Source of the DNA: Mantamonas sphyraenae STR306
Taxonomy: Eukaryota; Protista; CRuMs
Direction: 5' to 3'
NCBI GenBank assembly: GCA_026936335.1
Contig: JAPMXV010000053.1
Coordinates: 186,001-250,000 of the forward strand
Length of the DNA: 64,000 nt
A program made the position numbers and the translations under genes. Position 1 is the stretch's first letter. Each line of letters opens with the position of its first letter. This document shows positions 14,731-63,082 of this stretch, piece by piece. The notes below the pieces were generated by a model, which was given only the letters and a program-made list of their open reading frames with translations, ran no database searches and was not told where the DNA came from.

Positions 14731-14765
<35 letters not shown>

Positions 14766-34800: not shown

Positions 34801-37095
34801 CACCGATGCGAGCTCCCGCCACTTCCACCCGCCACAGCTGTGGAGTGGGCGTATTCGGGTTCCCAAATGTATCTACATCCCATGTTTCCTGGGTGTAGGC
34901 CACAAGAAGGGTGCGGCGACTGGCGGACCAAGCAATTGGCCGTTTGCCGAATCCAGCCGAGTTGCGATCGGGAATTTGATCTCCGGGCATCTGGCCAAGG
35001 TTGCCCGTGACATAGGGGTCCAACGTGGTCGTGTTGTACAGGACAATGCGGCGGTTTCCTCGGTCCTGGATGACCAGGAGGCCGTCGGGACCCATCTGGA
35101 CGCCTGAAGGGAACTGCAATTCGGTCAATGCAGTGCCGGAGGAGCCAAACACCTTTTCCTGGGCAAAGTTGAGGGTGCTTCGTACACGAACAAACGCATT
35201 GGGGTCAGCGGCGTGCAAGATGAAGAGACGATTGGTTGCACCGTCCACCTCAAAGTCGAGTAGAAAGCCGTCGTCGATTGCGGATCCATCTGACGTCTCC
35301 AGATACTTGGATTCGGTAAGGTTGGAGAGGTGGACACGTGTCATGGGCATGTTGATGGAGATCGGATGTTCTTGTGGGACTGAGCCCAGGACGCCAGCAA
35401 ATGCCACCCAGAGGGTTTGGTGCTCGTTGTCCAGCTTCATGTTGACAATGACGGTGCTGGAGTCGGTGGCATTGACGGTGAACGTGCGAATGACATTGCC
35501 ATTCAGATCAATTTCGGCCACCTCATTTGTGTACCGCTTGAGAAGCGTGAAGAGATTGCCCGTGGTTGGATTGTACGCAGAACCGAAGCTTCGTGACCAG
35601 TAGGCACCGCGAAGGACGTACATCCACCAAGGCCGGGTGAGATCCGCGACCAGGGGTTGGTAGTTGAGTTGGCGTCGGAGCAACGTGCGTTGGTAGGTGC
35701 CGTTCCACGAATAGACGGTGATGTTGGATGCGTTGTCAACCAGCACAGTGTCATTGTCGACAACGACAAGAGTCTGCACATCTCGGATGTTGTCGATGTT
35801 CGCACTGCCGTAGGGTGTGGTCCAGTTGGTGAGTGGGGTCTCGGTCAGCGTGATGGGTGATGCATGTTGGCAGGCGGTACCCCAGAAGCCTGAATTGCAA
35901 TCACAGGTTCCTGGACTGCCAATGCCACTGCGGCATGTGCCGTGGCCATTGCACGGGTTGGCTGCGCCACCGGGGCATTCGTTTTGGCACGAGACGTTGC
36001 CTTCGGGTCCGTAGTAGCCCGGTTTGCATTCACGCTGCAGAATCTTAACCTGGCGGTTGTCTTGGTCGGCGATGTACAGGTTTCCACGCGAGTCGACGTC
36101 GAGAGCAGTGATGTGCAGAACACCACCGCGCTGGGCGCCTCGCGTGAGGGAGAACGTGGCCTCCAGCTGGCCATCCACAGTGTAGCGGCGGACGATGGCA
36201 AAGATGGAGTCGGCCACATACACAGTGCCGTAGCGTTCGTCGACTGCCACATGCGGTGCCCATGTGCTTGCAGTGGGCACCGACGTGCTCCACAACGGCG
36301 TCGTCTGTGTGAGGTTGTATGCACGCAGGAAGTGGTTGTTTGCGCTTGTCTCCACCAAAGCGTACATGCGGTTGCGGGTGCAGTCGAAGCCGATGCTATC
36401 ATAGTGCGGATACGTCACCGCAGAAGGATTCACCGGGGTGAAATCGGCATTCGTTTGGTACGTAGCAGTGTTTGTGAAGTTTGTGGTGTCGAACCACTGC
36501 ACAGGGGGTGTGAACCGTCATGCAATGGTGTCGTACAGGCAGTGGAGGGTGTTTTGTGCACATTAAAAGTCAAGATGCAGTGTGAGGGCCAGGTCCGGGG
36601 AAGGCGCGAAAAAGAAAAAGCGTGATGCGCGTTCGCAAAAGCTTCCACGAGTTCCCGTCCACTTACGTGCACAGTTCCCGCTGCGACCAGATAGAGACTG
36701 CCCTGACACACCGCAACTATGCTGTGACCTGACTCGGATGTTTCCGGGGTTGTCTTGACACCATTTGCATTGACGGCAAAGATATTTGGGCCGGCAGTGC
36801 CAAACGAGTTTGTCGTTCCGACATTTGGAAACAATTCGACAGTGGCGTCGGTGACCTCGACAAAGTTGCTGGATGCACTGACGGGGATGCGAACGCCCTT
36901 GTTATCCATGAGGGTGATAACATTGGAAGTCTTGTCCACGTGAAGGAGCCTTGGTTGGGTAAAGTCCCTGTTGCCGACCGTTCCCTTCAGGCGTGTTCCG
37001 TAGACCTGCGTCACCGTGTACTGCTCGTTCACGGTTGCATGGATGGCAGGCACGAGAAGAACAGCAACAAAGAAGAGGATCGTCGCAGACTGCAT
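31871..37095 (-). CDS. Secretory-pathway receptor-like protein (1684 aa): signal peptide, NHL/beta-propeller regions, EGF-like domains, Cys-rich GCC2/GCC3-type repeats, C-terminal multipass membrane domain
   Basis: Exons 37095-36667 and 36496-31871. Signal MQSATILFFVAVLLVPAIHA; DVDSRGNLYIADQDNRQV; CNGHGTC; about 14 C..C.AG.F repeats; GHTGPLC..C; YLQL; FLYDGF....YYWEVV...RK; acidic tail. Confidence 0.88.
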
Positions 37096-37143: not shown

Positions 37144-40100
37144 TCACCTCTGTGCAGTGCTGCTACCGGTCTCATCTGTGCCTGTGTTGCTTCCAAACTT
37201 GCTGCCTGTGCTTGACTTGCTTCCAAACTTGCTGCCTGTGCTTGAATTGCTTCCAAACTTGCTGCCTGTGCCTGACCTGCTTCCAAACTTGCTCCCTGTG
37301 CCCGATTTGCTTCCAAACTTGCTGCCTGTGCTTGACTTGCTTCCAAACTTGCTGCCTGTGCCTGACCTGCTTCCAAAGCTGCTGCCTGTGCTTGATTTGA
37401 GTCCCAAGCCGCTGCCTCCAAGTGTGTCGAGTCCCACCGCGGCAGCGCGACCAAATCCCCATGTCTTCTTGCCACTCTTGTCGCTCGGTGGTTCCTCCAC
37501 CACACCTTTTCTCTCGGGAATGGAAGCCCACACGTCATCATGATCTTCTGCCAACCACCGGAGCACCCTGTCCAACACCTCGTCGGGCATCGTCCACCAC
37601 TGCGCACTGGCTTCGTACGCCTCCATCCCACCTGCCTCAAACATCACCTCCCTCTCCTCCATATTCATGCTCACCACGGTCTCGATCTGCTTGTCCAGTC
37701 CCTCTGGGAACAGATGATGCTGTGCCTTCGCCCATGGGATCAATGCACGCCTCATCACCGGAGCCTGGTTCTGCCGTGTTCCTGTGCTGGAGACCTCAAA
37801 CATATGGGACCTGATCCAGTTGTCATTCATCCCAATCTTCACTAGATTTTCGTATCCGTGGATGTTGTTTGCGAGCAGAATCGTTCGATTCATCTGGGCA
37901 CGCTGGTGCAGGAAATCCGCAGCAGAAGACATGTCTGTGCCCATCTCGAGCATGACGCGCACTGCATGCTCAACGTTTCCCTTCAGTGCCCGTGAAAGTC
38001 CAGTGTGTCCGTTGCCGTCGTCCAGGAGCGGGTCGGCACCGTTGCGCAGGAGAAGCGCCGCAATCTCTTCGTCCAACACAAACAGCGTGATCGGCAACAA
38101 GGAATAGAACTCACCAGGTGGTCGAAACTGGGTGTTGATCCTCGCATCAGCACCTGCGCGCAGCAGTCTTTGAACTTCCGCCACGCCCCAGGTCTTCTCT
38201 TCCTTCACGCACCACCAAGGCACCCAAGTCGGCATATCTTCGTCTATACGCGCCCCATGGTCAAGCATCAGCGCCACAACCTCCCAGTTTCGGCGTGGCG
38301 AGGTCAGCGCGACCATGAGCGGTGTTCGGAGAGTCCCACCACGGGACATGGTGGCCGCGACCTTTGTGCTCGCCCCCGCCTCCAGAAGCCTCCTGACCAA
38401 GTCACTGCTGCGCATGGTAACGGCGAGATGGAGTGCAGTGGTTCCAAAGATCTTGTGCGCCATGTTGGGATTCGCTCCGTGGTCCAGCAGCTGTTGGACA
38501 AGCTGCACGCCAGCTGCAACCATGTCATGGTTGTGTCTCGAGTTCAACGTCACAATGGTGTTCAAAATCGCCACAAGGAACGGGGTACGGTCTGCAAACC
38601 TGCAATCGGGATCCAATCCACGCTCAAGCAAGTCTGGGAGCAACTCTGTGTCCTGCAGCATTGCCATGATCAAGTTTGTCAGCGTTTTGTTGCTCTCCTT
38701 GATATTAGAGATGTCGCCCAGCACAAAAGGGTCGGCTCCGGCGCGAAGAAGCGCGGCAATGTGCTCGAATGAGCCGTTCTCCTCGATGTGCCCCTCGCAC
38801 GCGAAGTGCAGTGGCGACTTCCCCCACGCGTCCAAAAGAGAAGGATTGGCACCTGCGTCAAGTAGTTCCAGCACACAAGCAATTTGCACTGGCTTGTTGG
38901 ACAGTGCCAATTGCAAAGCCGTGCGTCGCTTCCCGTTGACGGCATCCAGATCATCGTTGTCGCCAGCGCCTGCTTTCAACAGCGCCCGCACATTCTCCAC
39001 AGGTCCATACGACGCTGCATAGTGCAGCGGCAAGAACCCCTGCCCATTCACCACGTGCACATCAGCCCCCGCTGCCAGCAGAATCCTCACAGACTCCACG
39101 TGCTTCTCCACCAGCGCCGGTATCAGCGGCGTGTCCCCATGCTTGCTCACCGCATTCACATCCACATCTGCACGTTCCATCAGCCACATCAGACACGCGT
39201 ACGACCCCTTGCTTGCGTGGTGTGCCATCGTCAGTCCCGCCTCTGTCACGTGTGTCAGACTCGCCCCTGCCTCGTGCAGCATCTCCACACACTCCAAGTG
39301 GCCGTTGCGCATCGCACATCCCATGGCAGACATGTTGCTGTCGTTCCTCCAGTCTGCCTTTGCCCCCGCATCCAACAGCACCCTCAACGTCTCCACAGCT
39401 CCCGCGTCCGCTGCATACATGACCAGTGAGTCACCTCCATCCAGTCGCCTGTTCACATCTGCCGCCCCAGCTTCAATCAGCACTGCCACCATCTCTGCAT
39501 CGTTCGTCTGCACTGCCACCAACTCCAACGGTGCCACGCCCTCCGATGAACGCTTTGTGATGCACCCATGGCCCAACAGACACTTCACTATGTCTGTGTG
39601 GCCCATGTGCACCGCATGCTCCACTGCACGCATGCCCAGGTCGCTGGCGTTCACGTCGGCGCCGTGCTCAAGCAGAAGCTGCACCAGCTCGGTCTCGCCA
39701 GCCACCACAGCTCCCACCAGCAGCCTCCCCATCTCCTCAATGTCCACCATATCATCCTGCTGCAGCATGGACACGGCTGCGGCAATGTTGCGGGCGGTGA
39801 TGGCGTTTGTCAAGGAAAGCTCAGCTTTCGCGTGGACAGCCTCCTGGGCAGCTGCCAGCATGGCCTGGACAAACTCTGTGTCCATGTTCTTGCTTGCGTA
39901 CGGTTCCATACGCACCCAATCACACCTCGAATCCATGTCAAGAACCCTCGCATCGAACAATTGCTTTCTCAGCGGGAACCCTGAGCTGGGACGTTCGCAC
40001 GGCGCCAGAACAGCAAGGACATCGGTGGCCACTCTCCGCCGCACTGATTGTCCTTCTTCGACGCTAATGGGCCAATGAACCGGCACAACCGTGCATGCAA

Positions 40101-40404
40101 ACATGGCGGGCTGCGCTGGAGGCTTCCGCTGGACGAACCCAGTGTCCTTGTCGTCCTTCTTCACCCAAACGCGCATGTTGTCACCGTTCCAGACCACGTA
40201 CTGCCCTGCCAACATCTTGTGCTTTGTTTCCTTGGGCAGAAGTCTGGAGGACCTTGAGGGGACCGTGGGGGGCCGCCCGAACTCAAACATCGTCACTGTT
40301 GTGGCTTCCCCGAGCAGGAATGCAATGGATTGCAACAGCTCGTCCCACCTCCATTTTGTCATGGAATCTGCACGCATGACGTGAATGTTCATGGGACTTG
40401 TCAT
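37144..40404 (-). CDS. Ankyrin-repeat protein, paralogue A (1086 aa), with C-terminal F-box/PRANC-like motif and FG-like repeat tail
   Basis: ATG 40404 chosen by alignment with the paralogues. Many ANK repeats (GDTPLI.A, GFLPLHYAA, GTTALHLAV) and WWTMPDEVLDRVLRWLA. Confidence 0.88.
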   Translation of the reverse strand: MTSPMNIHVMRADSMTKWRWDELLQSIAFLLGEATTVTMFEFGRPPTVPSRSSRLLPKETKHKMLAGQYVVWNGDNMRVWVKKDDKDTGFVQRKPPAQPAMFACTVVPVHWPISVEEGQSVRRRVATDVLAVLAPCERPSSGFPLRKQLFDARVLDMDSRCDWVRMEPYASKNMDTEFVQAMLAAAQEAVHAKAELSLTNAITARNIAAAVSMLQQDDMVDIEEMGRLLVGAVVAGETELVQLLLEHGADVNASDLGMRAVEHAVHMGHTDIVKCLLGHGCITKRSSEGVAPLELVAVQTNDAEMVAVLIEAGAADVNRRLDGGDSLVMYAADAGAVETLRVLLDAGAKADWRNDSNMSAMGCAMRNGHLECVEMLHEAGASLTHVTEAGLTMAHHASKGSYACLMWLMERADVDVNAVSKHGDTPLIPALVEKHVESVRILLAAGADVHVVNGQGFLPLHYAASYGPVENVRALLKAGAGDNDDLDAVNGKRRTALQLALSNKPVQIACVLELLDAGANPSLLDAWGKSPLHFACEGHIEENGSFEHIAALLRAGADPFVLGDISNIKESNKTLTNLIMAMLQDTELLPDLLERGLDPDCRFADRTPFLVAILNTIVTLNSRHNHDMVAAGVQLVQQLLDHGANPNMAHKIFGTTALHLAVTMRSSDLVRRLLEAGASTKVAATMSRGGTLRTPLMVALTSPRRNWEVVALMLDHGARIDEDMPTWVPWWCVKEEKTWGVAEVQRLLRAGADARINTQFRPPGEFYSLLPITLFVLDEEIAALLLRNGADPLLDDGNGHTGLSRALKGNVEHAVRVMLEMGTDMSSAADFLHQRAQMNRTILLANNIHGYENLVKIGMNDNWIRSHMFEVSSTGTRQNQAPVMRRALIPWAKAQHHLFPEGLDKQIETVVSMNMEEREVMFEAGGMEAYEASAQWWTMPDEVLDRVLRWLAEDHDDVWASIPERKGVVEEPPSDKSGKKTWGFGRAAAVGLDTLGGSGLGLKSSTGSSFGSRSGTGSKFGSKSSTGSKFGSKSGTGSKFGSRSGTGSKFGSNSSTGSKFGSKSSTGSKFGSNTGTDETGSSTAQR
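37188..37397. repeat. 30-bp coding minisatellite, 7 copies (peptide S[S/G]TGSKFGSx)
   Basis: The unit tgcttccaaacttgctgcctgtgc plus 6 variable nt recurs at 37188, 37218, 37248, 37278, 37308, 37338 and 37368. Confidence 0.95.
38955..39904. repeat. About 950-bp near-identical duplicate, copy 1 (copy 2 at 43404-44351)
   Basis: Direct comparison shows roughly ten substitutions clustered in the left ~290 bp, a 2-nt deletion in copy 2, and otherwise identity. Confidence 0.95.
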
Positions 40405-40440
40405 TGTGTGCTTCCACCACTCGTGTGGGTGCGCTTGCGC
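40394..40440. repeat. 47-bp perfect direct repeat, copy 1 (extends imperfectly 40381-40447)
   Basis: ggacttgtcattgtgtgcttccaccactcgtgtgggtgcgcttgcgc is identical to 41724-41770. Confidence 0.95.
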
Positions 40441-40583
40441 TTGTCCCAAACTCGTTGCCCCCGTCGTCGCAGCTGGACGATTGATGGCATGCTGGTGATG
40501 TGGACGTCTTGGTGCACATGCGGGGCTGTTGTGTGCTTTGATTTGGTGGTGTGGGCGTGTGCGTCTTTTTGACTCACATCGGA

Positions 40584-40613
40584 TGACGTCAACTTGGGGC
40601 GCCGCTGACGTCA
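40584..40613. promoter_or_regulatory. Pair of CRE/ATF palindromes (TGACGTCA) in the divergent promoter between ankyrin gene A and the orphan ORF
   Basis: TGACGTCA at 40584-40591 and 40606-40613 (22-bp period). Confidence 0.45.
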
Positions 40614-40699
40614 ATCGCGCCCGGGCGGCCCCAGATGCCCCAACGAAATGCCGCCCAAATCCAGATGCGCCCACACATGCAACCGTACCTTGATTGGTG

Positions 40700-41692
40700 A
40701 TGCAGCAGCGATTGCGGCAAGCCCGGCAGTCCTGCATGCAGGCGCCGCTGTGTGCGGTTGTGTCGGCGGCGGCAATCGTTGTCATGGCGCTGGGAAACTG
40801 GTGGATGGTGCTGACGGTGCAGAGACACTCCCATCGCACACATGTGCTGCCCCGTCTTCTGCGGACGGTGGAGGTGCACGAGCTGTGGCTCAATCGCATC
40901 GACCGCGAACTCGCGGATCATAGCCGGAGAATCTCGTCAGCCACGTATCAGCAGCAAAGGTACGCGGGTTGGAGTGCACCGCAGGTGCATGCCCTGCAAC
41001 GTCAGGTGCGCGAGCTTTCGCATGAGCTGCAGGATTTGCGCGCGGACATCCAGTTTGGCCATCTCAAAGGTTGCCCCAAGGAGCCCAGGACAAGGACCAA
41101 GACCATGAGAGGGATCCCGCGGTCCTCGGAATCCACATCCAATGCTGAGCCACCGCTACGCATGTTGGCACCATCGACACAGGGGTTGCCCCCAGGGCAC
41201 AAACCGCTGTTGCTGGCGACCAGGCAGGCGGGACCAGCCATGACCCCGGACATCAAAGACGGGGTCATTGTGGCGTTGTGTGCTCGCGGGAAGGAGGAGG
41301 CGACTCGGCGGGTGAACAGCTTGCGCGCGTGGGAGCGCAACGACTTTGTACAGCACATGCGCATGCAGTGTCGCATGCTGGATGAGGACAAGGTGGATGT
41401 GGGACTGCGTGAACGCGCGTGTCGGTTGCTGCGGTGGCTGCATGAAGAGGACCTCTCGGCGTTGGTGGAGCACTGTGAGGCAGAACTTGCTGCCGGGCAG
41501 AAAAAGGACGTGATTGAGCAGCTGGAGCAGCAGCTGTTGATCTCTGACGAGAGCGAGCGCAGGGGAAGGGTGTGGGAGAGCATGTTGGCGGTGTTGGAGC
41601 GTGCTCTGAGAGCAGATGGGAGTGTGCAGCGAGCCAACGAGATCTCGGAGATCCGGCGTGATCCAAAGGATTGCGAGTGTCGATGCAGGTGA
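40700..41692 (+). CDS. Orphan protein (~330 aa) with an N-terminal hydrophobic helix and coiled-coil/helical regions
   Basis: Uninterrupted ORF, LCAVVSAAAIVVMALGNWWMVL hydrophobic stretch, heptads LQRQVRELSHELQDL. No recognisable family. Confidence 0.6.
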   Translation: MQQRLRQARQSCMQAPLCAVVSAAAIVVMALGNWWMVLTVQRHSHRTHVLPRLLRTVEVHELWLNRIDRELADHSRRISSATYQQQRYAGWSAPQVHALQRQVRELSHELQDLRADIQFGHLKGCPKEPRTRTKTMRGIPRSSESTSNAEPPLRMLAPSTQGLPPGHKPLLLATRQAGPAMTPDIKDGVIVALCARGKEEATRRVNSLRAWERNDFVQHMRMQCRMLDEDKVDVGLRERACRLLRWLHEEDLSALVEHCEAELAAGQKKDVIEQLEQQLLISDESERRGRVWESMLAVLERALRADGSVQRANEISEIRRDPKDCECRCR

Positions 41693-41723
41693 CGGGTGGC
41701 GGATACAGTGCTGTGAATTCATT

Positions 41724-41770
41724 GGACTTGTCATTGTGTGCTTCCACCACTCGTGTGGGTGCGCTTGCGC
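41724..41770. repeat. 47-bp perfect direct repeat, copy 2 (extends imperfectly 41713-41778)
   Basis: Identical to 40394-40440; contains the stop codon of ankyrin gene B. Confidence 0.95.
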
Positions 41771-44700
41771 ATTGTCCCGCGCCTGAGTCCGATCCGCTGC
41801 CCGATTCCCACTCCACTCGCGCGTGCGGCGTTGGAGGACCGTGAAAACAGCGACGATCCGTGGGTTCCCCTTCCCCTTCCACCTCCACCGAACAGAGATG
41901 CCCCCTTCTCAGCTGACGTGCGCCCGCCCCATCGAGAGGACAAACTCGCCGATCTGGCCTTCAGTGAAGCCCACATGTCATCATGATCCTCTGCCAACCA
42001 CCGCATCACCCTCTCCAACACCTCTTCGGGCATCGTCACCCACCCTTCCCACCCTCCCTCCTCCACATACTCCTCCATCCCACCTGCCTCAAACATCACC
42101 TCCCTCTCCTCACTGTTCATGCACACTACTGTCTCGATCTGCTTGTCCAGCCCCCCTGGGAACAGATGATGGTGTGCCTTTGCCCATGGGATCAATGCAC
42201 GCTGCACTTGCTCTCCATACCCGTGGTCCCGCGCCCACATCGCAGCTGCTGAATCTGATGAATACATGTTTGTCTTGATCCACGTCTCATCAAAGCCCAA
42301 GGCAATCAATTCCTCGTACATGTGGATGCGATTCGCCACAAGCACCGCCCTGTTCACCCGGTCCTTGTCCTCCAGGTACTCTGCAGCACAGGACATGTCC
42401 GTGCCCATCTCAAGCATGGTACGCACCGAAAGCTCAAAGTTCCTTTGCAAAGCATGTTTCAAGCCGTCCATGCCGGAAGGGGATCGGTGCAGCGGGTCCG
42501 CTCCGCAGCGCAGCAGTTTCGTCATTGATTGGTCGTCCTTCACCTGTGTCAGGACCACCCTTGAGTCCCGTTCGACGGGTGCTTTGTACTCCACATTGAC
42601 AAAAGCATCCGCGCCAGCGCGCAGCATTCTGTCAAGCAGTGATTGGTCTTGCAGCCCAACTGCCAAAGCAAAGCTCCACACCCTGAACAGAGCAATTGTG
42701 TCGTCCAAACGCACGCCATGGTCCAAGAGCAGCATTACAACCTTGCTGTTGTTGTAGGCCCACATGGCTGCGCAGAGTGGACTACGCTGAAATCGGTCCG
42801 CCGTGTCCTCTGTCTCCAGTGCCTGTGTGTCTGCACCCGCGTCCAGCAGGAGTTGGACGAGTGGCACGTTTCTTTTCAGGACGGCTACGTGGAGAGCTGT
42901 TGTCCCAAACTCCTCGTTTGCCAGGTTCACATCAGCCCCGAACGCAAGCAGCGTTTCGATTGCTGCCATCCCTTCCAGTCGCCCATCGACCAGCTCCTGA
43001 TCATCTTCGGCCAAGTGGTCGATCAAAACCACGAGCAGCGGGCTTCCATCTGCAAACTTCCCGTTTGGATCCATGCCACGTTCCAGCAGAGTGCTCAGCA
43101 ACGTTCCGTCGTTCCCCAACAGGTGGCGAGCCACGTCTGCACGTGACCTCCTGCGTGCATCCAAGTTCCTTCCAGAGCCCGCCACAAATGGGTTGGCTCC
43201 ATGTTGGAGCAGTGTCTCGAGCAGACCGCGCGTGCGTCTGAATTGACGACCGAGGACCAGACCCTCCAACGGCGTTCGGCCTTTGCTGTCCAGCGCATTT
43301 GGATTTGCACCTGCGCCCAGCAATTCCACAAGAACATCTACGTGGCCATTTGTCACTGCCAGATGCACAGGCGACAATGCGTCGACGTTCTCAATTGAAT
43401 TGACGTTGTCGCCAGCGCCTGCATCCAACAGCGCCCGCACATTCTCCACCGGTCCAAACGACGCTGCATAGTGCAGCGGCAAGAACCCCTGCCCATTCAC
43501 CACGTGCACATCAGCACCCGCTGCCAGCAGAAGCCTCACAGACTCCACGTGTTTCTCCACCAGCGCTGGTATCAGCGGCGTGTCCCCATGCTTGCTCACC
43601 GCATTCACATCCACATCTGCACGTTCCATCAGCCACATCAGACATGCGTACGACCCCTTGCTTGCGTGGTGTGCCATCGTCTGTCCCGCCTCTGTCACGT
43701 GTGTCAGACTCGCCCCTGCCTCGTGCAGCATCTCCACACACTCCAAGTGGCCGTTGCGCATCGCACATCCCATGGCAGACATGTTGCTGTCGTTCCTCCA
43801 GTCTGCCTTTGCCCCCGCATCCAACAGCACCCTCAACGTCTCCACAGCTCCCGCGTCCGCTGCATACATGACCAGTGAGTCACCTCCATCCAGTCGCCTG
43901 TTCACATCTGCCGCCCCAGCTTCAATCAGCACTGCCACCATCTCTGCATCGTTCGTCTGCACTGCCACCAACTCCAACGGTGCCACGCCCTCCGATGAAC
44001 GCTTTGTGATGCACCCATGGCCCAACAGACACTTCACTATGTCTGTGTGGCCCATGTGCACCGCATGCTCCACTGCACGCATGCCCAGGTCGCTGGCGTT
44101 CACGTCGGCGCCGTGCTCAAGCAGAAGCTGCACCAGCTCGGTCTCGCCAGCCACCACAGCTCCCACCAGCAGCCTCCCCATCTCCTCAATGTCCACCATC
44201 ATCCTGCTGCAGCATGGACACGGCTGCGGCAATGTTGCGGGCGGTGATGGCGTTTGTCAAGGAAAGCTCAGCTTTCGCGTGGACAGCCTCCTGGGCAGCT
44301 GCCAGCATGGCCTGGACAAACTCTGTGTCCATGTTCTTGCTTGCGTACGGTACCACACACGCCCAATCACCATTTGAAACCTTGTCAAACTCCCTTGGAT
44401 CACCCTGTCTCTCGCCCCCCCAGTTCCCGTGGTGAACCTGGGCTTGCCTGAACGGTGCCAGGACGACTGTGGAAGACACGGGCGCCAAACTGCGCTCCAG
44501 CATCGACTCAAAGGCATCGTCGGATATGACGGTGAACACAGGCACAACGACACACGCAAACATGGCAGCACAGGGAGGCAGCCTGGTTGTGCGCTCGTGA
44601 ATCCGTGCCTGCGTCCCTTCCATCAACCACAAACGCACCTCTCCAACCGTCCACACCTGGAAATACATTTGATCGACGGCTCCTTGTTGTCTCCGCTTTG

Positions 44701-44872
44701 GTTTCCTGTCTGCTTTTGTGAACAGGATTTTTTGGCTGGGATTCTGGGGAACATACTCGACACAGACCTGCTCCTTCGTGCCCAGTTCCGCAAGGGTCTC
44801 CTCCAGTGTCACCCATTGGGATGCTCCTATAGCGTTCACTCTCTGGAGGAGGATGTTGACTCGCGAAGTCAT
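41731..44872 (-). pseudogene. Ankyrin-repeat paralogue B, frameshifted or split at about 44199 (ORFs 44872-44186 and 44202-41731)
   Basis: 2-nt deletion relative to paralogue A (CAG GAT GAT ATG GTG versus CAG GAT GAT GGT GGA CAT TGA). Both halves are otherwise open; C-terminal WVTMPEEVLERVMRWLA. Confidence 0.75.
43404..44351. repeat. About 950-bp near-identical duplicate, copy 2
   Basis: Matches 38955-39904. Confidence 0.95.
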
Positions 44873-44892
44873 GAAAAGCCACAAGGTTGGCT

Positions 44893-47795
44893 TCACCGGC
44901 GCCGCTTCTTCCCACCCCCTTTTGCGAACGGTTGCTGCGCATGTCCATCCCTGGTTGTCCTCAATGTAGCACGTACCTTGGTTCGGCGTGAACGTTTGCC
45001 CTTCCAGATGCTGCTGTCCACATCCGAGGCGAACCAGCGCACAACTCGCCACAGCACCTCGTCGGGCAATGTCCACCATTCCCGGGTCGCTTCGTACTCG
45101 TCCATGCTCCCAGCGTCGAACATCACATCGCGTTCCTCCCAATTCATCACCAACATCGTTTGCACAGGCTCATCCATCGTCCTCGGAAAAAGCCAATGGT
45201 GCCGTGGCTCCCAGTCGATCACAGAAGGGCCATCTTCTGCACGCGCCGGGTACATGTGTGAGGCAATCCAATCGTCCGTGCCACCCTTGAGAGAAACCTT
45301 GTCATAGGTGTGCACACCAAGCCCTGCCAAGAGAGCGCGTGTGCACTCCCTCTCAGTCAGCACATCTCGCTGCATGGGGTGCACTCCCATCGACCTCAAC
45401 GTACGCACGACGCGCTCGTGATTGTTTGCTAAAGCACGATCACAGGCGTTTCGCCCTTTCCGGTCGCGTCGCCTGGCATCGGCACCAAACTCAAGCAGCA
45501 GCAGCACTGCGTCCTCGCTCTCCTCCAGGTGCTCCAGTGGCATACGAGACTGTCTCTTGAAGTCAGAAAAGGGTGTGTCCAACACCTGTGACGCACCCGC
45601 CTCCAACAGCATTCGGAGAGTCTCCGAGCTCATGTCGGCGATTTCGACTGCGATGCACCGCCAAAGCTTGGCCAGATCCTCAGACTTGCCACCTCTGGGC
45701 AAACCAACATCGAAAGTGACGCCGTGGTTGACAAACTCCATCACAGTCGGCATGGAGCGTTTGGAAATTGCCTTGGACAACGCTGTTGTTTTCCCGGATC
45801 CGCCACGAAGCGGATGATGAATGCTCCATCCGAGGATCTCTGGGTCTGCGCCTGCTTCCAAAAGGACACGCACGGTGAATGGATGGGCAAGATGTGCCGC
45901 GATGAACAGCGCCGTCCGCAACGTCCCCTCCTGCTGCACGTTGACATCCACCCCGGCATCCACGACCGCTTGCACAGCGTTCAACGTCGCTCTGGACTCT
46001 TCGCGTGTGCTCACCACCAAATGAAGAAGCGTGCTTCCTTGGGGAGTGCGAGCATCGTGCAAGTTCGTCCCCAGTCCCAGCAGCACGTCAAACTGTTCCT
46101 CAGCGATCATCTGCTCGATCACAGCCATCATGTCCTCCTCCCTGTCCATCAAGAACAGATTGGCACCGGATCGAAGCAGTAGCGCAATCATTTGTGTGTG
46201 CTTGTTTCTTGCGGCGATGGAGAGCGGGTGCCCCCGGCTGCATCTGGTGTTGACCAAGTCGTGATCACCCCCACCAGCGTCAAGCAACGCCTCCACCAAA
46301 GCGATCGTGCCGTACTCAACAGCTGCGTGCAACGGGAGCACACTCTCGTTGGTGCCGATCCTTGCATCTGCGCCGAGCTTGAGCAAGAGGACCGCACAGT
46401 CCTCTGTTTCCTTTGTGCCGCATGCCAGGAACAAGGGTGTGATTCCGCTCTGATTCTGGGCGTTGAGGTCCCACGATGAATGCTCCATCAACCACTCGAT
46501 CGATTGCGTTTTCCCCACGGCTGCTTCGTGCAACAGGGTCGACCCGTCGCCACCAATCCATCCCAGGTCTGCACCCTCTTCAACCAAGCGCGAAGCATGC
46601 AGCGTGCATCCATTCTTCAACAGGGCACGCAGAGCCGTTGTGTGATCGCTCTCTTTGCAGATGCGATCGAGCAAAAAGCGCGTCACTTGTGTCGAGCCTG
46701 CTTCCGCCGCAAACCACAGCATCTGCTTCCCATTCATCACGTTATCTTGCAAACCGAGCCCATGAGACAGAAAAACCTGCACGAGTTCAACAGAGTCGTT
46801 GCGGCAGGCCACAACGGGGGCACAGAACAGTTTTCGACCCTCATCATCATCGCTCAACAGCCTCGTGTTCTGCTGCCGCTGGAGCATCCACGCACGATGC
46901 TCAAGCAACACGTGAACACAATCCACATTTTCCGCGTACGTGGCATGCACAAGCAAGGGCAAGCCAGCAACACCGGTGGCCGCCTTTGCCCCAGCCTCCA
47001 GAAGTACCTGCACCATCTCTGCGTCGCCCTTGAGAACAGAAACTGTAAGGGCAGCCTCCAAATTCCATGGTGGGCCTTCCGACTCGTACAGCGCCTCGAT
47101 CAACTCCGAGACCCCTCCACACGCGGCGATTTGTCCCAGTGTCGGATTCGCTCTGCTCTCAAGGACGCCAATCGCAGTATCCAACGCCTGTCTTATGTAC
47201 TCTTCCTCAGAAACTGTGCCGTTGTACACATTGGCACATGTCCAGAGGCCCCTTTGCACTTCATGGATGCTTTGCAGAGTCTTTTGTCTTCCAGCCCGCT
47301 TTCCTGACTGCTCGTCTTCCACAACAGGGGCCAGAATGACTGTGCTAACCCGGGTGTCCAGAATGCGATTGTATTCGGACGAGTTGGTGAGTTCGCGTAA
47401 CGCGAATACCGTGCAGGCAAAGATGGGAGGCGCGCGGAAACGATCCACGAGTCGACTGCCCTCTCGAGCCACCTCGTGCTGCATGATCCACACACGCAGG
47501 TCGTCACCCACAGTCCACACAAGGTATGGCACATCCAGAACGATCTGAGGATACGCTGAGGCTGCGCCTCTGGGAGACAATGGCATGCCGTGCAGCACCT
47601 GGGTTTCCTTGTGGCTAGCCATCGAGTCCAGAACTGCCCAAGACACCCCGTGTCAGCGCACGGTTTCCCCCTGCACAGTTCCACACCCACTCACTCACTA
47701 GACTCGATGTCACCCTTCGACTTTGCCGACACGGAGGCGTAGTCGAAGAGGACGTTCCGAACCATTTTCACTGCCTCTGTCTGCGCCACACACAT
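44893..47795 (-). CDS. Ankyrin-repeat paralogue C (~935-945 aa) with a 65-nt intron
   Basis: Exon 1 from ATG 47795 (or 47765) to 47699, intron 47698-47634 (GTGAGT..CTGAC..GCAG), exon 2 47633-44893. Splicing restores the family N-terminus (MVRNVLF...DIESILDSM). C-terminal WWTLPDEVLWRVVRWF. Confidence 0.85.
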
Positions 47796-47799
47796 TCAT

Positions 47800-50691
47800 T
47801 CACCTCACATGGTCCTTGTCCACCGCCAACCACCGCATCACCCTCTCCAACACCTCGTCGGGCATCGTCCACCACTCTGCACTCGCTTCGTACGCCTCCA
47901 TCCCACCCGCCTCAAACATCACCTCCCTCTCCTCCATGTTCATGGCAAGCACTGTCTCGATCTGCGTGTCCAGCCACGATGGGAACAGAGTGTGCAATTC
48001 TTCCTGCCAGTCAAGCAGTGCCCGGTCGGCCGCAACTTCGCCGTACGCCAGTGGAACGTCCTCCCCGTACATGTTTTCCCTCAACCATTCGTCGGTGATC
48101 CTCCAAGCAAGTGCATCCTCGTATGTCGTCAGACCCTGGGCCACACGTGCAGCGCGACACATCAACGTGCCCTTGTGCAGGGCAAGCGTCGAAGACGCGT
48201 CCAATCCTCGCTCGACAAGCATGCGAGCAACCATGGAATGATTGTTCTTCACAGCCACATGCATCATCGTCACATCCACGCCACGTCGTTTCACCACCCC
48301 GTTGACATCCGCGCCGTGTCTCAGCAGAATCACTGCACTTCCCTCGCCCAGCTTTTCAAACAGATCCACCATGCTCAGAGGCCGTTGAGCCTCGTGCCCT
48401 TCGCACATCGGCATGTGCAGTGTCTCGTGTGCACCAGCCTCCAGCAGCATGCACAAGAGATCCAGATCTGTTGTGCGCAGAGCTCCCCACACAAGCCGCG
48501 TGGGCGTGTCTTCATCCACCCGTGCGCCATGCTCGATCAACGACCGCAGGATGTCTCCCAGCACAAAGCCGGGCTTGATGGCCACCATCTTCAAATGGGG
48601 CTTTCCGAGAACGTGCACAAGAGGTGACAGCACATCCTCCCGACCCTGCCTCCGCCCGGGACGGCTCGCATCCGCACCTGCCTCCAACAGGGCCTGCACA
48701 CAATCGCTGCTCTGTGCATCAATGGCCTCAATCAACGGCGTCGTCTCTCCCTCTGGCGTCCACCCCTCCACATCGGCACCGGCCTCCAGGAGCGCCCGCA
48801 CAGCCGCCACAGAGTTTCTGCGAGCTGCAACGTGCAGTGGCGTGCCTGGTGCCAATTTCCACGACGACACTGCGTTCACATGAGCGCCTGCGTCCACGAG
48901 CAAGCGGACACACTCCATTTGGTCCGCCGTGTCCAACGGTCCTGCCGCAGACATGCACATGTGCAGCACGGTCTCACCATCCTCGTTTGTGCCATGCACG
49001 TCCAACGTGCCTGCATCCAGCAGTTGTTTCAACACGTCTGCCTTGCGCAGTTGCGTCCCAAGAATCTTCGTCCGGCCGTTTTGCGAGCTCACACGCAGAG
49101 GATCCGCCCCGGCCTGCAACAGCTCAAGCACAATGTCTGGCCATTTGCTTTCCGCCGCCTGTGACAGCGGCGTCACAGGGTCCTCCTCCTGGGACATGTC
49201 CACGGCTTCCAGCATCCCATTCTCACCCGCACCATGTGCAAGCAGCAAGCGGATCTTCTCCACGGGCCCATACCCTGCAGCAAGGTGCAACGGCGTCATG
49301 CCGGACTTACTCACGGACACTGCGTCGGCTCCTGCATCCAGCAATGCTTTGAGGAGGCCCACGTCTGTCTTTTGGCACGCAAACGCCACGGGGCCATCGC
49401 CGTTGCTCGTGAGGGCATGAACATCCACCACGTTTTGCTCCAACACCCACTGCAAACACTCCAAGGTGCCCACAGCGCAAATGTGGATGGCATTTTGGCG
49501 CGAAAGCGTCTCTCTCGCGAGATCCGCTCCAGCTTCGTACAGCAGCTGGGCACAGCGCAGATTCCCACGACGCAATGCACTGCACAAAGCGCTCACACGG
49601 CCGGGATTGGATGGCTCCAATGCAGCACCGGCCTCCAGCAGCCAGCACAGACTCTTCTCAGCCCCTTCGTACGCCGCCCACGCAAGCATGCCGTCCTCCT
49701 TCACCTCCATATTGGCCACATCCAACCCACTGGCCTCTTGAAGCACCTGCAGCATCTCAGGCATGTCATGCGTGCAAGCATGCCGCACAGCATCTCGGAT
49801 CACGTCCGCATCGCACCCTGCTTCAACGAGCACACGCACACACGCGCCGTGTCGTCCATTCACAGCATGCTTCAGCACAAAGATGCCACAGTGCTTCGCG
49901 AATGGCTTCGCTCCAGCACCGAGAAGGCTGGCGCAAATATCGGCATCTCCGATCACCGCGGCCATTCCCAGCAATTGATTCAGCTCGTGCCCTTCCTCCT
50001 CGCCCAGTGGCTTCTCACCCTCCGAACTTTTCTTGGACTGTGCACGTTCAGCCAGAAGAGTGGCCACAGAAGCTGCATCTCTGGCCGTCACGGCGTGTTG
50101 CAACGATCGTGCGCTCCGTTCGTTCACCATCGCCTTTGCAGTGAGCACCATGGAGTGCACATACTCCACATCTCCCCAAACCCCCGCATACGGGGCACTG
50201 CAGCCCCATGTGCCCTCCTGCACCTGTGCAAGCTCACACAAATCTGCTCGCACTTTCGTGTTCCTGGTCTCCTCCAACGGCGCAAGCATGACGTTTGGAA
50301 ACAAAGATGCCAATCGCTCATCGATCACGTTGCCCACATCTTGGAACGGCACCAGACGCATGGAGGGCACCAAAACGGCGGCAAACCCAAAGTTGTCCTT
50401 CTGCTCGGTTGGGCCGTGCTTGGTCCACAACGACACATTGTATGATTTGTTTGTGCAGCACCACACACGCACACCGTGCAATGAAACCACGCGAAAGGGC
50501 ACTGTGGTCTTTTTGGACCCCTCTTTTCTGAGAAGCTCGTGGTCCTCCACAGGCTGCTCTGCCGCCTCTTCCAGCGTTTTTCGCACCTCTTCAATCCCAC
50601 CTCCGGTGACATTCGTCAAATGCACCAACAGAACATTGGGGCAGCGTTCGGATGACTGGAAATTGCTCATGAGCTGGGTCGAGCCGCGCAT
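47800..50691 (-). CDS. Ankyrin-repeat paralogue D (963 aa)
   Basis: Intronless ORF; ANK repeats (GMTPLHLAA, GTPLHVAA); C-terminal WWTMPDEVLERVMRWLA. Confidence 0.9.
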   Translation of the reverse strand: MRGSTQLMSNFQSSERCPNVLLVHLTNVTGGGIEEVRKTLEEAAEQPVEDHELLRKEGSKKTTVPFRVVSLHGVRVWCCTNKSYNVSLWTKHGPTEQKDNFGFAAVLVPSMRLVPFQDVGNVIDERLASLFPNVMLAPLEETRNTKVRADLCELAQVQEGTWGCSAPYAGVWGDVEYVHSMVLTAKAMVNERSARSLQHAVTARDAASVATLLAERAQSKKSSEGEKPLGEEEGHELNQLLGMAAVIGDADICASLLGAGAKPFAKHCGIFVLKHAVNGRHGACVRVLVEAGCDADVIRDAVRHACTHDMPEMLQVLQEASGLDVANMEVKEDGMLAWAAYEGAEKSLCWLLEAGAALEPSNPGRVSALCSALRRGNLRCAQLLYEAGADLARETLSRQNAIHICAVGTLECLQWVLEQNVVDVHALTSNGDGPVAFACQKTDVGLLKALLDAGADAVSVSKSGMTPLHLAAGYGPVEKIRLLLAHGAGENGMLEAVDMSQEEDPVTPLSQAAESKWPDIVLELLQAGADPLRVSSQNGRTKILGTQLRKADVLKQLLDAGTLDVHGTNEDGETVLHMCMSAAGPLDTADQMECVRLLVDAGAHVNAVSSWKLAPGTPLHVAARRNSVAAVRALLEAGADVEGWTPEGETTPLIEAIDAQSSDCVQALLEAGADASRPGRRQGREDVLSPLVHVLGKPHLKMVAIKPGFVLGDILRSLIEHGARVDEDTPTRLVWGALRTTDLDLLCMLLEAGAHETLHMPMCEGHEAQRPLSMVDLFEKLGEGSAVILLRHGADVNGVVKRRGVDVTMMHVAVKNNHSMVARMLVERGLDASSTLALHKGTLMCRAARVAQGLTTYEDALAWRITDEWLRENMYGEDVPLAYGEVAADRALLDWQEELHTLFPSWLDTQIETVLAMNMEEREVMFEAGGMEAYEASAEWWTMPDEVLERVMRWLAVDKDHVR

Positions 50692-59404: not shown

Positions 59405-59436
<32 letters not shown>

Positions 59437-62400: not shown

Positions 62401-63082
62401 GTTCCGGGAGCAGGTGGATCAGTACTACGAACAGATGAACGCGTACTCGTTTGCACCCAACGTGCACGAGGCGCCGCACACGCAAGAGGCACGCAAGATG
62501 CTGAGCATCGAGACGCAGCTGCGTGCACAGAAGCAACACGGCGAGGGAGACAGTCTGCTGGACATGGTGACACAGTACGAGCCGCGCTTGTTCTACGCAG
62601 ACACGACGGAGCTGCGCAGGCATGTGGAACCGGACACAAAGACACGCAGCGTGCAGGGACTGACGGCACGTCCGCCGGCACTGCATCCCGCGCCCACTCG
62701 CTATTTTGTGAGCAAGTATGCACCCATGCTGTACTATCCAAAGGTGGTGTGGCAAGAAGCGAGCAGGAGCGGGCCATCGCTGCCTGTGACTGCGTTGATC
62801 CGCGGTGAAGTGACCGCAGAGGAGCTGCTGGAGATGGATGAAAGCACGGAGGATGTACTGGGCAGCGACGTCGTGGAGGGAGTGCTGTTGCAAGGCGGTG
62901 TAGGTTTGGAGGTGGCCGTGCACGGCCAAGAGGAGGACTACGACGGGGATGTTGGCGAAGATTTCCAGCCCGCACAAGGAGAGTTTGTCAAGCCGGCGGA
63001 AGAGACGGATGAGGGGGACGAAGGAGAGGATGGAGAGGATGGAGAGGAAGGGGAGGAAGAAGACGAGGAAGATGAGGATTGA
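51348..63082 (+). CDS. Giant ASH/MSP (ASPM-SPD2-Hydin) Ig-like repeat protein, Hydin/CFAP47-like (~3803 aa)
   Basis: Exons 51348-51476, 51619-51956 and 52138-63082 join in frame (11412 nt). Around 20 or more repeats of [L/I]DFG.C.......L.N.G.....F...P..G.L.PG......V.F.P after a helical N-terminus; acidic tail. Confidence 0.85.

What the first reader, a model, noticed from the sequence alone, without database searches (positions are those of the whole stretch)
37144..50691. Four-gene tandem array of ankyrin proteins with a C-terminal F-box/PRANC-like motif: candidate variable E3-ligase adaptor repertoire
Seen: four co-oriented paralogues share an N-terminal alpha/beta domain, long and highly divergent ankyrin arrays, and a conserved end L..W....H.LFP..[LM]D..[IV][EQ]T...MN.EER[ED]VMF[ED]AG.M..Y......W.T[ML]P[DE]EVL.RV.RW. 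Known: L/M-P-x-E-hydrophobic is the core of the SKP1-binding F-box. ANK plus a C-terminal F-box (PRANC) is the architecture of poxvirus and Orientia/Wolbachia-type effectors, whereas cellular F-box proteins usually carry the motif N-terminally. Inference: a protist locus coupling variable binding surfaces to a constant cullin-RING adaptor, which could serve defence (tagging pathogen or virus proteins) or derive from a viral or endosymbiont lineage.
Basis: partly seen in the sequence, partly recalled or inferred. Interest (0 to 1): 0.85.

Follow-up and report, generated by a model that had tools for sequence, protein, structure and literature searches.

The report
Ankyrin gene array, orphan tail module
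Four neighbouring ankyrin-repeat genes of the marine flagellate Mantamonas sphyraenae end in a constant 65-75-residue tail that marks a family of at least 240 genes in this genome; the tail copies only the first helix of an F-box, so the proposed ubiquitin-ligase role is still untested.

Summary
Observation confirmed.

Interpretation only partly supported.
- The tail is not special to this locus. It is the constant C-terminal module of a family of at least 150 profile hits and 241 exact-motif copies. Most members carry RI-type LRRs or ankyrin repeats, and many lie near chromosome ends.
- Against 1.84 billion proteins the module has one outside relative, an environmental singleton.
- F-box membership fails: Pfam scores are 13-15 bits against a cut-off of 25.5, and only helix 1 is matched. 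In 33 of 44 members the protein ends within 9 residues of that helix, so helices 2 and 3 cannot exist.
- The PRANC and SOCS-box models find nothing, and fold searches find nothing.
- This genome's 73 canonical F-boxes are detected easily, none at a module.

What is new for this array:
- Its N-domain occurs only in these four genes.
- Genes 1 and 2 share a 969-bp conversion tract.
- The frameshift in gene 2 is probably an assembly error.

The scan met this family twice before on other contigs of this genome, with the same verdict. Best reading: a lineage-specific docking module on variable scaffolds, with recruitment of a ubiquitin ligase as one unproven possibility.

The parts
37144..40404 (-). 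Gene 1: N-domain + ankyrin array + C-terminal module + low-complexity tail. The likely start is the ATG at 40404. The ORF runs on upstream to 40899, but that part is probably not coding.
39760..40404 (-). Gene 1 N-terminal domain (about 215 aa), found only in the four genes of this array.
37525..37899 (-). Gene 1 extended C-terminal domain. The core module is 37525-37752.
37188..37397 (-). Gene 1 tail built from a 30-bp repeat that encodes G-S-K-F-G-S-type units, downstream of the module.
41731..44872 (-). Gene 2. In the window it is two frames (41731-44232 and 44186-45142, likely start at 44872). They are joined if the AT seen in read contigs behind 44197 is present.
41968..42351 (-). Gene 2 extended C-terminal domain. 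The core module is 41968-42204.
43404..44370 (-). Tract of gene 2 that is 98.3% identical over 969 bp to 38955-39923 of gene 1: a recent gene conversion or segmental copy. It covers the end of the N-domain and the first ankyrin repeats.
44893..47646 (-). Gene 3: N-domain + ankyrin array + module + 36-aa basic tail. The ORF opens with GTG at 47646; the first ATG is at 47622.
45004..45378 (-). Gene 3 extended C-terminal domain. The core module is 45004-45231.
47800..50691 (-). Gene 4: N-domain (50047-50691) + ankyrin array + module. The protein ends 8 residues after the F-box-helix-1-like helix.
47803..48174 (-). Gene 4 extended C-terminal domain. The core module is 47803-48027. AlphaFold2 model: helices at residues 58-63, 66-88 and 106-117 of this 124-aa piece.

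Best explanation
The four ORFs are real paralogous genes of Mantamonas sphyraenae. They form a chromosome-internal, divergent ankyrin branch of a very large lineage-specific family. Each family member is an intracellular repeat scaffold (RI-type LRR or ankyrin), followed by an ankyrin-like repeat and a constant module of 65-75 aa at or near the C-terminus. The module is an undescribed small helical domain: a long helix, a conserved G-G-M-x-x-Y loop and a terminal helix. It is conserved at the protein level, and its last helix resembles F-box helix 1. It is not an F-box, PRANC or SOCS-box domain by any membership test available here. Inferred, not shown: the module docks the variable scaffolds onto one shared partner or assembly. 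Recruitment of a ubiquitin ligase is the most obvious candidate. The array itself arose by local duplication, added its own N-terminal domain, and still exchanges sequence by gene conversion.
For: Genes and domains.
Organism: 25.06 Mb, 78 contigs, longest contig 751,365 bp and 59.19% GC all match PMC10492846.
Family size: 150 scored profile matches out of 354 candidates, all with E below 1e-15. The DNA pattern for M-N-x-E-E-R-x-x-M-F occurs 241 times, and 0 times in the reversed control.
Architecture: LRR_6 in 20 of 36 sampled members and Ank_2 in 14 of 36. The module lies within 9 residues of the stop in 33 of 44 members. The sampled N-termini begin directly in LRR or ankyrin repeats, with no hydrophobic leader obvious by eye; no signal-peptide predictor was run.
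Protein-level constraint: median pS 0.60 against pN 0.33 over 1035 pairs, with 14 invariant residues. Gene 3 against the other three has saturated pS (0.75-0.77) yet 52% identity.
Lineage restriction: one hit (E 9e-5) among 1.84 billion representatives. hhalign confirms it as a homologue over 113 columns, probability 96.5%.
Fold: AlphaFold2 pLDDT 81.8, with 87-93 over residues 51-110.
N-domain unique to the array: 4 matches in the genome.
Conversion tract.
Host-like composition.
Against: No partner has been identified and no binding is shown. The docking role is inferred only from architecture and conservation. The fold rests on one predicted model, and the five models range from pLDDT 52 to 82. 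No RNA data could be reached, so expression is not shown. Relatives of Mantamonas may be missing from the protein libraries, so 'lineage-specific' could be overstated.
Confidence: 0.6

Rival explanations
1. The module is a true but truncated or rearranged F-box, PRANC-like. The terminal helix binds SKP1, and the upstream long helix replaces F-box helices 2 and 3. The roughly 240-350 proteins would then be SCF substrate receptors.
For: Helix-1 likeness: hhalign P 3.9e-4 over 21 columns against this genome's own F-boxes; F-box_5 E 0.016-0.1. The outside homologue P0001 has an even more F-box-like helix, with weak F-box-like (E 0.023) and PRANC (E 0.12) hits. SKP1 is present, with a second divergent copy beside it. 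Large, tandem, fast-evolving families with a variable repeat and a short constant box are typical of E3 substrate receptors (established knowledge of FBXL, ASB and poxvirus ANK/PRANC proteins).
Against: All Pfam scores are below their cut-offs, and only 4 of 46 modules hit any F-box model. PF12937 finds 73 canonical F-boxes in this genome, none at a module. PRANC gives 0 hits. There is no room for helices 2 and 3 in 33 of 44 members. The invariant residues are mostly polar (H, D, N, E, R, Y, T), unlike the hydrophobic F-box core. Nothing in PDB or BFVD resembles the fold.
Confidence: 0.2
2. The module is a SOCS-box or BC-box-like element that recruits Elongin C and a Cul2/5-type ligase, as in animal ASB proteins (ankyrin repeats + C-terminal SOCS box).
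For: Ankyrin repeats followed by a short C-terminal helical box that ends in an L-P-x-x-hydrophobic helix recall ASB proteins (from memory, a lead only). One weak ESM Atlas row is a VHL-family cluster, TM 0.41.
Against: The SOCS_box model finds nothing at any module. The Skp1_POZ model, which as far as I recall also covers Elongin C, detects only the two SKP1 genes. TM 0.41 is below the level that indicates a shared fold.
Confidence: 0.05
3. The module descends from the C-terminal part of the prokaryotic PRiA4_ORF3 (MM3350-like) domain, which has a C-G-G-x-x-G-Y ... P ... W-x-G tail.
For: 14 of 46 modules hit PF07929, always on profile positions about 101-165 of 173, best E 9e-4. All 10 best PF07929 hits in the genome are module copies.
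Against: All hits are below the cut-off (at most 17.9 bits against 26.6). The hits are not independent, because the copies are homologous. hhalign of the module against 82 bacterial PRiA4_ORF3 sequences gives only 31 columns, P 0.006, probability 6%. The family's function is unknown in any case.
Confidence: 0.05
4. The constant 3' block is kept alike mainly at the DNA level, as a recombination handle for shuffling cassettes among family members, and not for a protein function.
For: There are near-identical copies near contig ends. Genes 1 and 2 share a conversion tract. Synonymous divergence in the module is lower among genes 1, 2 and 4 (0.24-0.44) than in the flanking ankyrin parts (about 0.65-0.70).
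Against: Across the family, synonymous sites are near saturation (median pS 0.60) while 14 residues stay invariant. That pattern indicates selection on the protein.
Confidence: 0.05
5. The array was acquired from a virus or an endosymbiont, as poxvirus or Wolbachia-type ANK effectors are.
For: Language-model neighbours of a 121-aa family-member piece (the ankyrin-like repeat plus module of an LRR-type member) include ankyrin clusters of Nucleocytoviricota. These hits come from the ankyrin features and are leads only.
Against: GC content is 0.56-0.60, as in the rest of the window. The module is shared with hundreds of host genes. There is no viral fold or PRANC match. The neighbours are ordinary host genes, a HYDIN-like gene and an NHL/ephrin-receptor-like gene.
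Confidence: 0.03

Closest known systems
F-box domain (Pfam PF00646, PF12937, PF18511) and F-box-LRR substrate receptors
   Same: The terminal helix T-[LMV]-P-D-E-V-[ML]-x-R-V-x-x-W-[LM] follows the L-P-x-E-hydrophobic pattern of F-box helix 1. A short constant helical box is attached to LRR or ankyrin arrays. The family is large, tandemly arrayed and fast-evolving.
   Different: Only about 20 residues match. Helices 2 and 3 are missing. The motif lies at the extreme C-terminus. A conserved stretch of about 50 aa upstream (W...H...D...E...M-N-x-E-E-R-x-x-M-F-x-x-G-G-M-x-x-Y) has no F-box counterpart. All scores are under the cut-offs.
PRANC domain of poxvirus and Wolbachia/Orientia ankyrin proteins (PF09372)
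   Same: Ankyrin repeats followed by a C-terminal, truncated F-box-like element.
   Different: The PRANC model finds nothing in the whole genome at E up to 0.1. No BFVD structure resembles the model. The module also sits on LRR proteins.
ASB proteins (ankyrin repeats + C-terminal SOCS box, PF07525)
   Same: Ankyrin array with a short C-terminal helical box that ends in an L-P-containing helix.
   Different: No SOCS_box match. No Elongin C was detected. The spacing and the conserved residues differ.
PRiA4_ORF3 / MM3350-like domain (PF07929), C-terminal tail
   Same: Motif-level likeness of G-G-x-x-G-Y ... P-[DE] ... W-x-G. 14 of 46 modules give weak hits on the same part of the profile.
   Different: The hits are sub-threshold. 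Profile-profile probability is 6%. The first 100 positions of that domain are absent.
Large variable gene families that cluster near chromosome ends in other protists
   Same: Many copies lie 4-20 kb from contig ends with the 3' end toward the telomere. There are long tandem arrays, near-identical copies and conversion tracts.
   Different: These proteins look cytosolic (ankyrin and RI-type LRRs, no signal peptide or membrane anchor seen by eye), and the four-gene array studied here is chromosome-internal.

Membership tests
Ankyrin-repeat proteins | Multiple Pfam ANK repeats above the cut-off | tested here: met
   Ank_2 E 8.9e-71, 5.6e-57, 1.8e-45 and 1.1e-49 for the four genes.
F-box | Match to a Pfam F-box model at or above its gathering score | tested here: not met
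   The best hit is F-box_5 at 13-15 bits against a cut-off of 25.5, in 4 of 46 modules. The genome-wide PF12937 search finds 73 loci over its cut-off, none at a module.
F-box | Three-helix domain of about 40-48 aa, with helices 2 and 3 following the L-P-x-E helix | tested here: not met
   In 33 of 44 members the protein ends within 9 residues of the helix. Gene 4 ends 8 residues after it. The AlphaFold2 model shows the helix as the last element.
F-box | Helix-1 consensus L-P-x-E-[IVL]-[LM]-x-x-[IV] | tested here: met
   hhalign against 12 of this genome's own F-boxes aligns 21 columns, P 3.9e-4, probability 35%.
F-box | Binding to SKP1 | tested here: inconclusive
   One complex prediction with a heterologous full-length SKP1 gave no verdict. 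It counts neither for nor against binding.
PRANC | Match to PF09372 | tested here: not met
   0 matches in the genome at E up to 0.1. None for the four tails at E up to 10.
PRANC | Structural likeness to the C-termini of viral ANK/PRANC proteins | tested here: not met
   Foldseek against BFVD: best E 2.0, and no ankyrin or PRANC protein is listed.
SOCS box / BC box | Match to PF07525, and presence of Elongin C | tested here: not met
   There is no SOCS_box hit at a module. Skp1_POZ detects only the two SKP1 genes.
PRiA4_ORF3 (MM3350-like) | Match to PF07929 at its cut-off, or a convincing profile-profile match | tested here: not met
   At most 17.9 bits against a cut-off of 26.6. hhalign probability 6%, P 0.006.
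Mantamonas C-terminal-module family (undescribed) | Core W-x4-H ... D-x3-E ... M-N-x-E-E-R-x-x-M-F-x-x-G-x-M-x-x-Y ... W-x-T-x-P-[DE]-E at the C-terminal end of a repeat protein | tested here: met
   All four genes score E 1e-55 to 1e-65 with the profile. At least 146 further loci score E below 1e-15. There are 14 invariant columns in 46 sequences.

The most novel reading that the evidence does not exclude
The module is a new kind of E3-ligase receptor box, made of a single F-box-like helix and a novel long helix. It would couple about 250-350 fast-evolving LRR and ankyrin binding surfaces, many of them near chromosome ends, to one degradation machine. That would amount to an innate-immunity-like or prey/virus-recognition repertoire invented in a deep-branching eukaryote (CRuMs).
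Probability: 0.15. Interest if true: 0.8.

Novelty: new variant of a known kind. Interest (0 to 1): 0.45.

Why it matters
Mantamonas belongs to CRuMs, a lineage near the base of Amorphea, and its genome paper does not mention this family (no 'ankyrin' or 'leucine-rich' in PMC10492846). By my estimate roughly 3% of its genes share one undescribed terminal domain on variable LRR or ankyrin scaffolds. Elsewhere that design marks ubiquitin-ligase substrate receptors or immune-type repertoires. If the partner of the module were found, it would show how a free-living protist wires hundreds of recognition surfaces to a common output. It would also show whether F-box-like adaptors can be reduced to one helix. 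For annotation, the practical point is that these genes should not be labelled F-box or PRANC proteins.

Tried and rejected
1. Complex prediction of the 75-aa module with a full-length SKP1 (P0013, 87% identical to the Mantamonas SKP1 C-terminal exon): 'no answer', score 0.03 against a mark of 0.34. This is not evidence either way. The Mantamonas SKP1 gene has introns. I searched its exons apart by reference and did not join them, so the cognate full-length SKP1 was not tested.

2. Fold searches with the module model all returned only generic helical hairpins:
- PDB Foldseek: best E 2.2.
- VIA-align wide: best Z 4.3.
- BFVD: best E 2.0.
- ESM Atlas: best TM 0.41.

3. Sequence and profile searches against PDB: nothing below E 1.

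4. The search for homologous proteins with the tail of gene 4: no hit. With P0001: only itself.

5. PRiA4_ORF3 lead: weak Pfam hits in 14 of 46 modules. I fetched 82 bacterial family members through a DNA pattern. hhalign gave probability 6%, so I rejected it as homology. An earlier attempt to find such a gene on plasmid pRi1724 found none.

6. NCBIfam on the modules: nothing.

7. N-domain:
- Pfam: nothing.
- Protein-atlas features: at most 0.79, uninformative.
- AlphaFold2 with 4 sequences: pLDDT 45. I ran no fold search on it, so the 'dead Ras-like fold' idea of another note could not be tested.

8. dN/dS on the ankyrin surfaces: synonymous sites are saturated between paralogues (pS 0.64-0.70), so no test of positive selection was possible. 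The only hint is the count of differences between the window and read contigs: N14:S5 in gene 2's ANK-and-module piece (41734-44196) and N6:S9 in gene 3. The numbers are small and paralogue cross-mapping is possible.

9. Expression: no RNA run was found.
Full report
WHAT IS IN THE SEQUENCE

The window has about 59% GC and long, mostly intron-free ORFs. Between 37.1 and 50.7 kb there are four large minus-strand ORFs: 37144-40899, 41731-44232, 44893-47646 and 47800-50691. All four are ankyrin-repeat proteins (Ank_2 E 1e-45 to 1e-70).

A four-way alignment shows three parts:
- a shared N-terminal region of about 200 aa;
- long ankyrin arrays that align poorly;

Three corrections apply.
- The first ORF is over-extended. 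Gene 1 most likely starts at 40404, because both it and gene 2 then begin M-T-S and align from there.
- Gene 2 has its N-domain in a second frame (44186-45142).
- Gene 3's ORF opens with GTG, with the first ATG at 47622.

THE FRAMESHIFT IN GENE 2

Logan contigs of three DNA runs of the same organism carry two extra bases (AT) behind 44197, at full depth. Gene 1 has the same AT at the equivalent place. With them the two frames of gene 2 join.

One caveat applies. This place lies inside a tract shared with gene 1, and the contig has twice the depth of its flanks, so it represents both copies. An unbroken contig at double depth argues that both copies carry the AT. Gene 2 is therefore probably intact, and the window has a 2-bp assembly error or a rare allele. 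I treated the two pieces separately throughout and did not join them.

THE ORGANISM

The assembly has 25,061,354 bases in 78 contigs, and the longest contig fetched is 751,365 bp. These figures, together with GC 59.19%, are those of the FALCON assembly of Mantamonas sphyraenae (PMC10492846). That paper does not mention ankyrin or leucine-rich repeat families.

THE TAIL IS A FAMILY MARKER, NOT A FEATURE OF THIS LOCUS

A profile of the four tails, searched over the whole genome, gave 150 scored matches out of 354 candidates, all with E below 1e-15. The matches cover profile positions about 55-118, that is the core W-x4-H ... D-x3-E ... M-N-x-E-E-R-x-x-M-F-x-x-G-G-M-x-x-Y ... W-x-T-x-P-D-E-V-x-x-R-V-x-x-W. 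A DNA pattern for M-N-x-E-E-R-x-x-M-F occurs 241 times, and never in the reversed control.

I fetched 44 further members and found the following.
- The module lies within 9 residues of the stop codon in 33 of them.
- Of 36 full-length members, 20 have RI-type LRRs (LRR_6, best E 1e-106) and 14 have ankyrin repeats.
- The LRR-type members also carry an ankyrin-like repeat just before the module.
- The sampled N-termini begin directly in LRR or ankyrin repeats, with no hydrophobic leader obvious by eye; no signal-peptide predictor was run.

Many copies lie near chromosome ends. Of the first 100 pattern matches listed, 29 lie within 20 kb of a left contig end. A series sits at about 4.1-4.2 kb from the end, all on the strand that points the 3' end toward the telomere. 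By my arithmetic, 78 left ends of 20 kb make about 6% of the genome. There are also long internal arrays (contig 15: 240-277 kb; contig 29: 11-67 kb; contigs 70 and 73).

The four genes of this window are chromosome-internal. They lie between an NHL/ephrin-receptor-like gene and a HYDIN-like gene, at 223-236 kb of contig 53.

Two earlier follow-ups of this scan, on other contigs of the same genome, reached the same family-level verdict. My results were obtained independently before I saw them, and they agree.

WHAT IS SPECIAL ABOUT THIS ARRAY

- The N-terminal domain occurs in these four genes only (4 matches in the genome). Its fold could not be modelled (pLDDT 45).
- The tails of the four genes share a further 50 aa of conserved sequence upstream of the core. 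Only a few other family members have it.
- Genes 1 and 2 share a 969-bp tract that is 98.3% identical (38955-39923 = 43404-44370). On both sides, amino-acid identity drops to 31-52% (mostly 31-38%) and synonymous sites are near saturation. This is a recent gene conversion or segmental copy.
- The module cores of genes 1, 2 and 4 are somewhat closer at synonymous sites (pS 0.24-0.44) than their flanks are. Gene 3 is saturated (0.75-0.77) and yet keeps 52% identity.
- In three of the four genes the module is followed by a low-complexity tail of 36-127 aa. In gene 1 this tail is built from a 30-bp repeat.

IS THE MODULE CONSERVED AS PROTEIN?

Yes. Over 1035 pairs of 46 modules, the median proportion of synonymous differences is 0.60 and of non-synonymous differences 0.33. 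Fourteen residues are invariant: W, H, D, N, E, R, F, G, M, Y, W, T, P, E. Homogenisation at the DNA level cannot explain this, although it does occur among near neighbours.

IS IT AN F-BOX, PRANC OR SOCS BOX?

- Pfam on the whole proteins finds only ankyrin repeats.
- On the isolated tails the best hit is F-box_5 at 13-15 bits (cut-off 25.5). It covers only profile positions 3-21 of 42, that is helix 1, and appears in only 4 of 46 modules.
- The genome's canonical F-boxes are easy to find: 73 loci are over the PF12937 cut-off, and none coincides with a module.
- The PRANC model finds nothing. SOCS_box finds nothing at a module.
- hhalign of the module against 12 of the genome's own F-boxes aligns 21 columns: the last helix against F-box helix 1, P 3.9e-4, probability 35%. 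The resemblance of that one helix is therefore real at motif level.
- An F-box needs two more helices after it, and in three quarters of the family the protein stops within 9 residues.
- AlphaFold2, using a 46-sequence alignment, gives a long helix (66-88), a conserved loop and the terminal helix (106-117). Mean pLDDT is 81.8, though the five models vary from 52 to 82.
- Nothing in PDB, BFVD or the ESM Atlas resembles this model beyond generic helical hairpins.
- The single complex prediction allowed, against a heterologous full-length SKP1, returned no verdict and is not used as evidence. The cognate SKP1 has introns. I searched its exons apart and did not build a joined model.

RELATIVES OUTSIDE THE GENOME

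A profile search of 1.84 billion representative proteins gave one hit, P0001 (E 9e-5). It is a 321-aa singleton from a 1-kb JGI metagenome contig. It has a weak, sub-threshold PSI-domain hit (E 0.0035, 18.1 bits against a cut-off of 23.1) and a hydrophobic stretch that I take for a membrane span.

hhalign confirms homology over 113 columns, including the last helix, at probability 96.5% and E 8e-10. In P0001 the M-N-x-E-E-R / G-G-M-x-x-Y core is degenerate. The last helix (I-P-K-E-I-L-Y-M-I-F-E-Y-L) looks even more F-box-like, with weak F-box-like and PRANC hits (E 0.023 and 0.12). About 55 further residues follow it. The extended domain therefore exists in at least one other, unknown eukaryote, in a different architecture.

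A SECOND WEAK LEAD, REJECTED

Fourteen of 46 modules give sub-threshold hits to the last third of the prokaryotic PRiA4_ORF3 (MM3350-like) domain. That domain's tail has a C-G-G-x-x-G-Y ... W-x-G motif. I collected 82 bacterial members through a DNA pattern search. The profile-profile comparison gave only 31 columns, P 0.006 and probability 6%, which is weaker than the F-box helix match. I treat it as chance or motif-level likeness.

HOW IT MOST LIKELY WORKS

Shown:
- a very large, lineage-restricted family of probably intracellular LRR or ankyrin scaffolds;
- a small constant C-terminal helical domain under protein-level constraint;
- tandem arrays, an excess of copies near contig ends, and gene conversion.

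Inferred:
- The constant domain is a docking or assembly module that ties many different binding surfaces to one partner or process.
- This design is typical of cullin-RING substrate receptors (F-box-LRR, ASB and poxvirus ANK/PRANC proteins, from established knowledge), and one helix looks like F-box helix 1. An E3-adaptor role is therefore the leading specific candidate.
- I give about 0.2 to SKP1 binding and about 0.05 to an Elongin-type box. The rest goes to an unknown partner, self-assembly or localisation.

Diversifying selection could not be tested between paralogues because synonymous sites are saturated. The only hint is from differences between the window and the read contigs: 14 non-synonymous against 5 synonymous in gene 2's ANK-and-module piece (41734-44196), and 6 against 9 in gene 3. 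The numbers are small and paralogue cross-mapping is possible.

VERDICT

The thing itself is a new variant of a known kind, a repeat-scaffold family with a constant terminal box, and its box is an undescribed domain. Interest is moderate. The family is striking for a deep-branching protist, but its function is open, and the scan has already reported the family twice on other contigs.

Noticed in passing
window 44197-44198: The window lacks two bases (AT) that contigs of three DNA runs carry, and that gene 1 has at the equivalent place. This splits gene 2 into two frames. It is probably an assembly error in a tract shared by two paralogues.
   Followed up: yes
window 38955-39923 and 43404-44370: A 969-bp tract is 98.3% identical between genes 1 and 2, with sharp edges and saturated divergence on both sides. 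This is a recent gene conversion.
   Followed up: yes
window 40401-40447 and 41731-41778: A 48-bp direct repeat (97.9% identical) joins the start of gene 1 and the end of gene 2. It brackets the 1.3-kb spacer between them.
   Followed up: partly
window 37188-37397: The tail of gene 1, after the module, is built from a 30-bp repeat that encodes G-S-K-F-G-S-type units. The other three genes lack it.
   Followed up: no
G000, many contigs, about 4.1-4.2 kb from contig ends (for example C7:4119, C9:4199, C18:4217, C22:4163, C15:340327): Nearly every listed chromosome end carries a family member at the same distance from the end, with its 3' end toward the telomere and near-identical DNA in the motif. 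This looks like a conserved gene beside the telomere, homogenised between chromosomes.
   Followed up: partly
L031 and L032 (G000:C35:33-38.5 kb): Two SKP1 genes lie 4.5 kb apart. One is canonical (105 bits, with introns). The other is divergent (53 bits), with an altered last helix and an acidic tail. It is a candidate dedicated partner for an expanded adaptor family, but this is untested.
   Followed up: no
P0001 (JGI metagenome contig, 1083 bp): This is the only outside homologue of the extended tail domain. It is a 321-aa protein with a weak PSI-domain hit and a likely membrane span. The domain is internal, and a cysteine-rich stretch of about 55 aa follows it.
   Followed up: partly
window 41700-47690 against runs X1-X3: About 40 single-base differences and a 3-bp deletion (47561) separate the window from the read contigs. 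Several are seen in only one or two of the runs, which suggests haplotype or culture polymorphism. The differences in gene 2's ANK-and-module piece (41734-44196) are mostly non-synonymous (14 against 5); those in gene 3 are mostly synonymous (9 against 6).
   Followed up: partly
window 41900-42099: Summed contig depth jumps about 20-fold (1133 against about 40-60) exactly over the module core of gene 2. This reflects the many family copies in the reads.
   Followed up: no
window 13411-14814, 31871-36502, 51926-63082: The neighbours are ordinary host genes: a Mitofilin/Mic60-like gene, an NHL + NCD3G + ephrin-receptor-like protein of 1543 aa, and a 3718-aa HYDIN/CFAP65-like ciliary protein.
   Followed up: no
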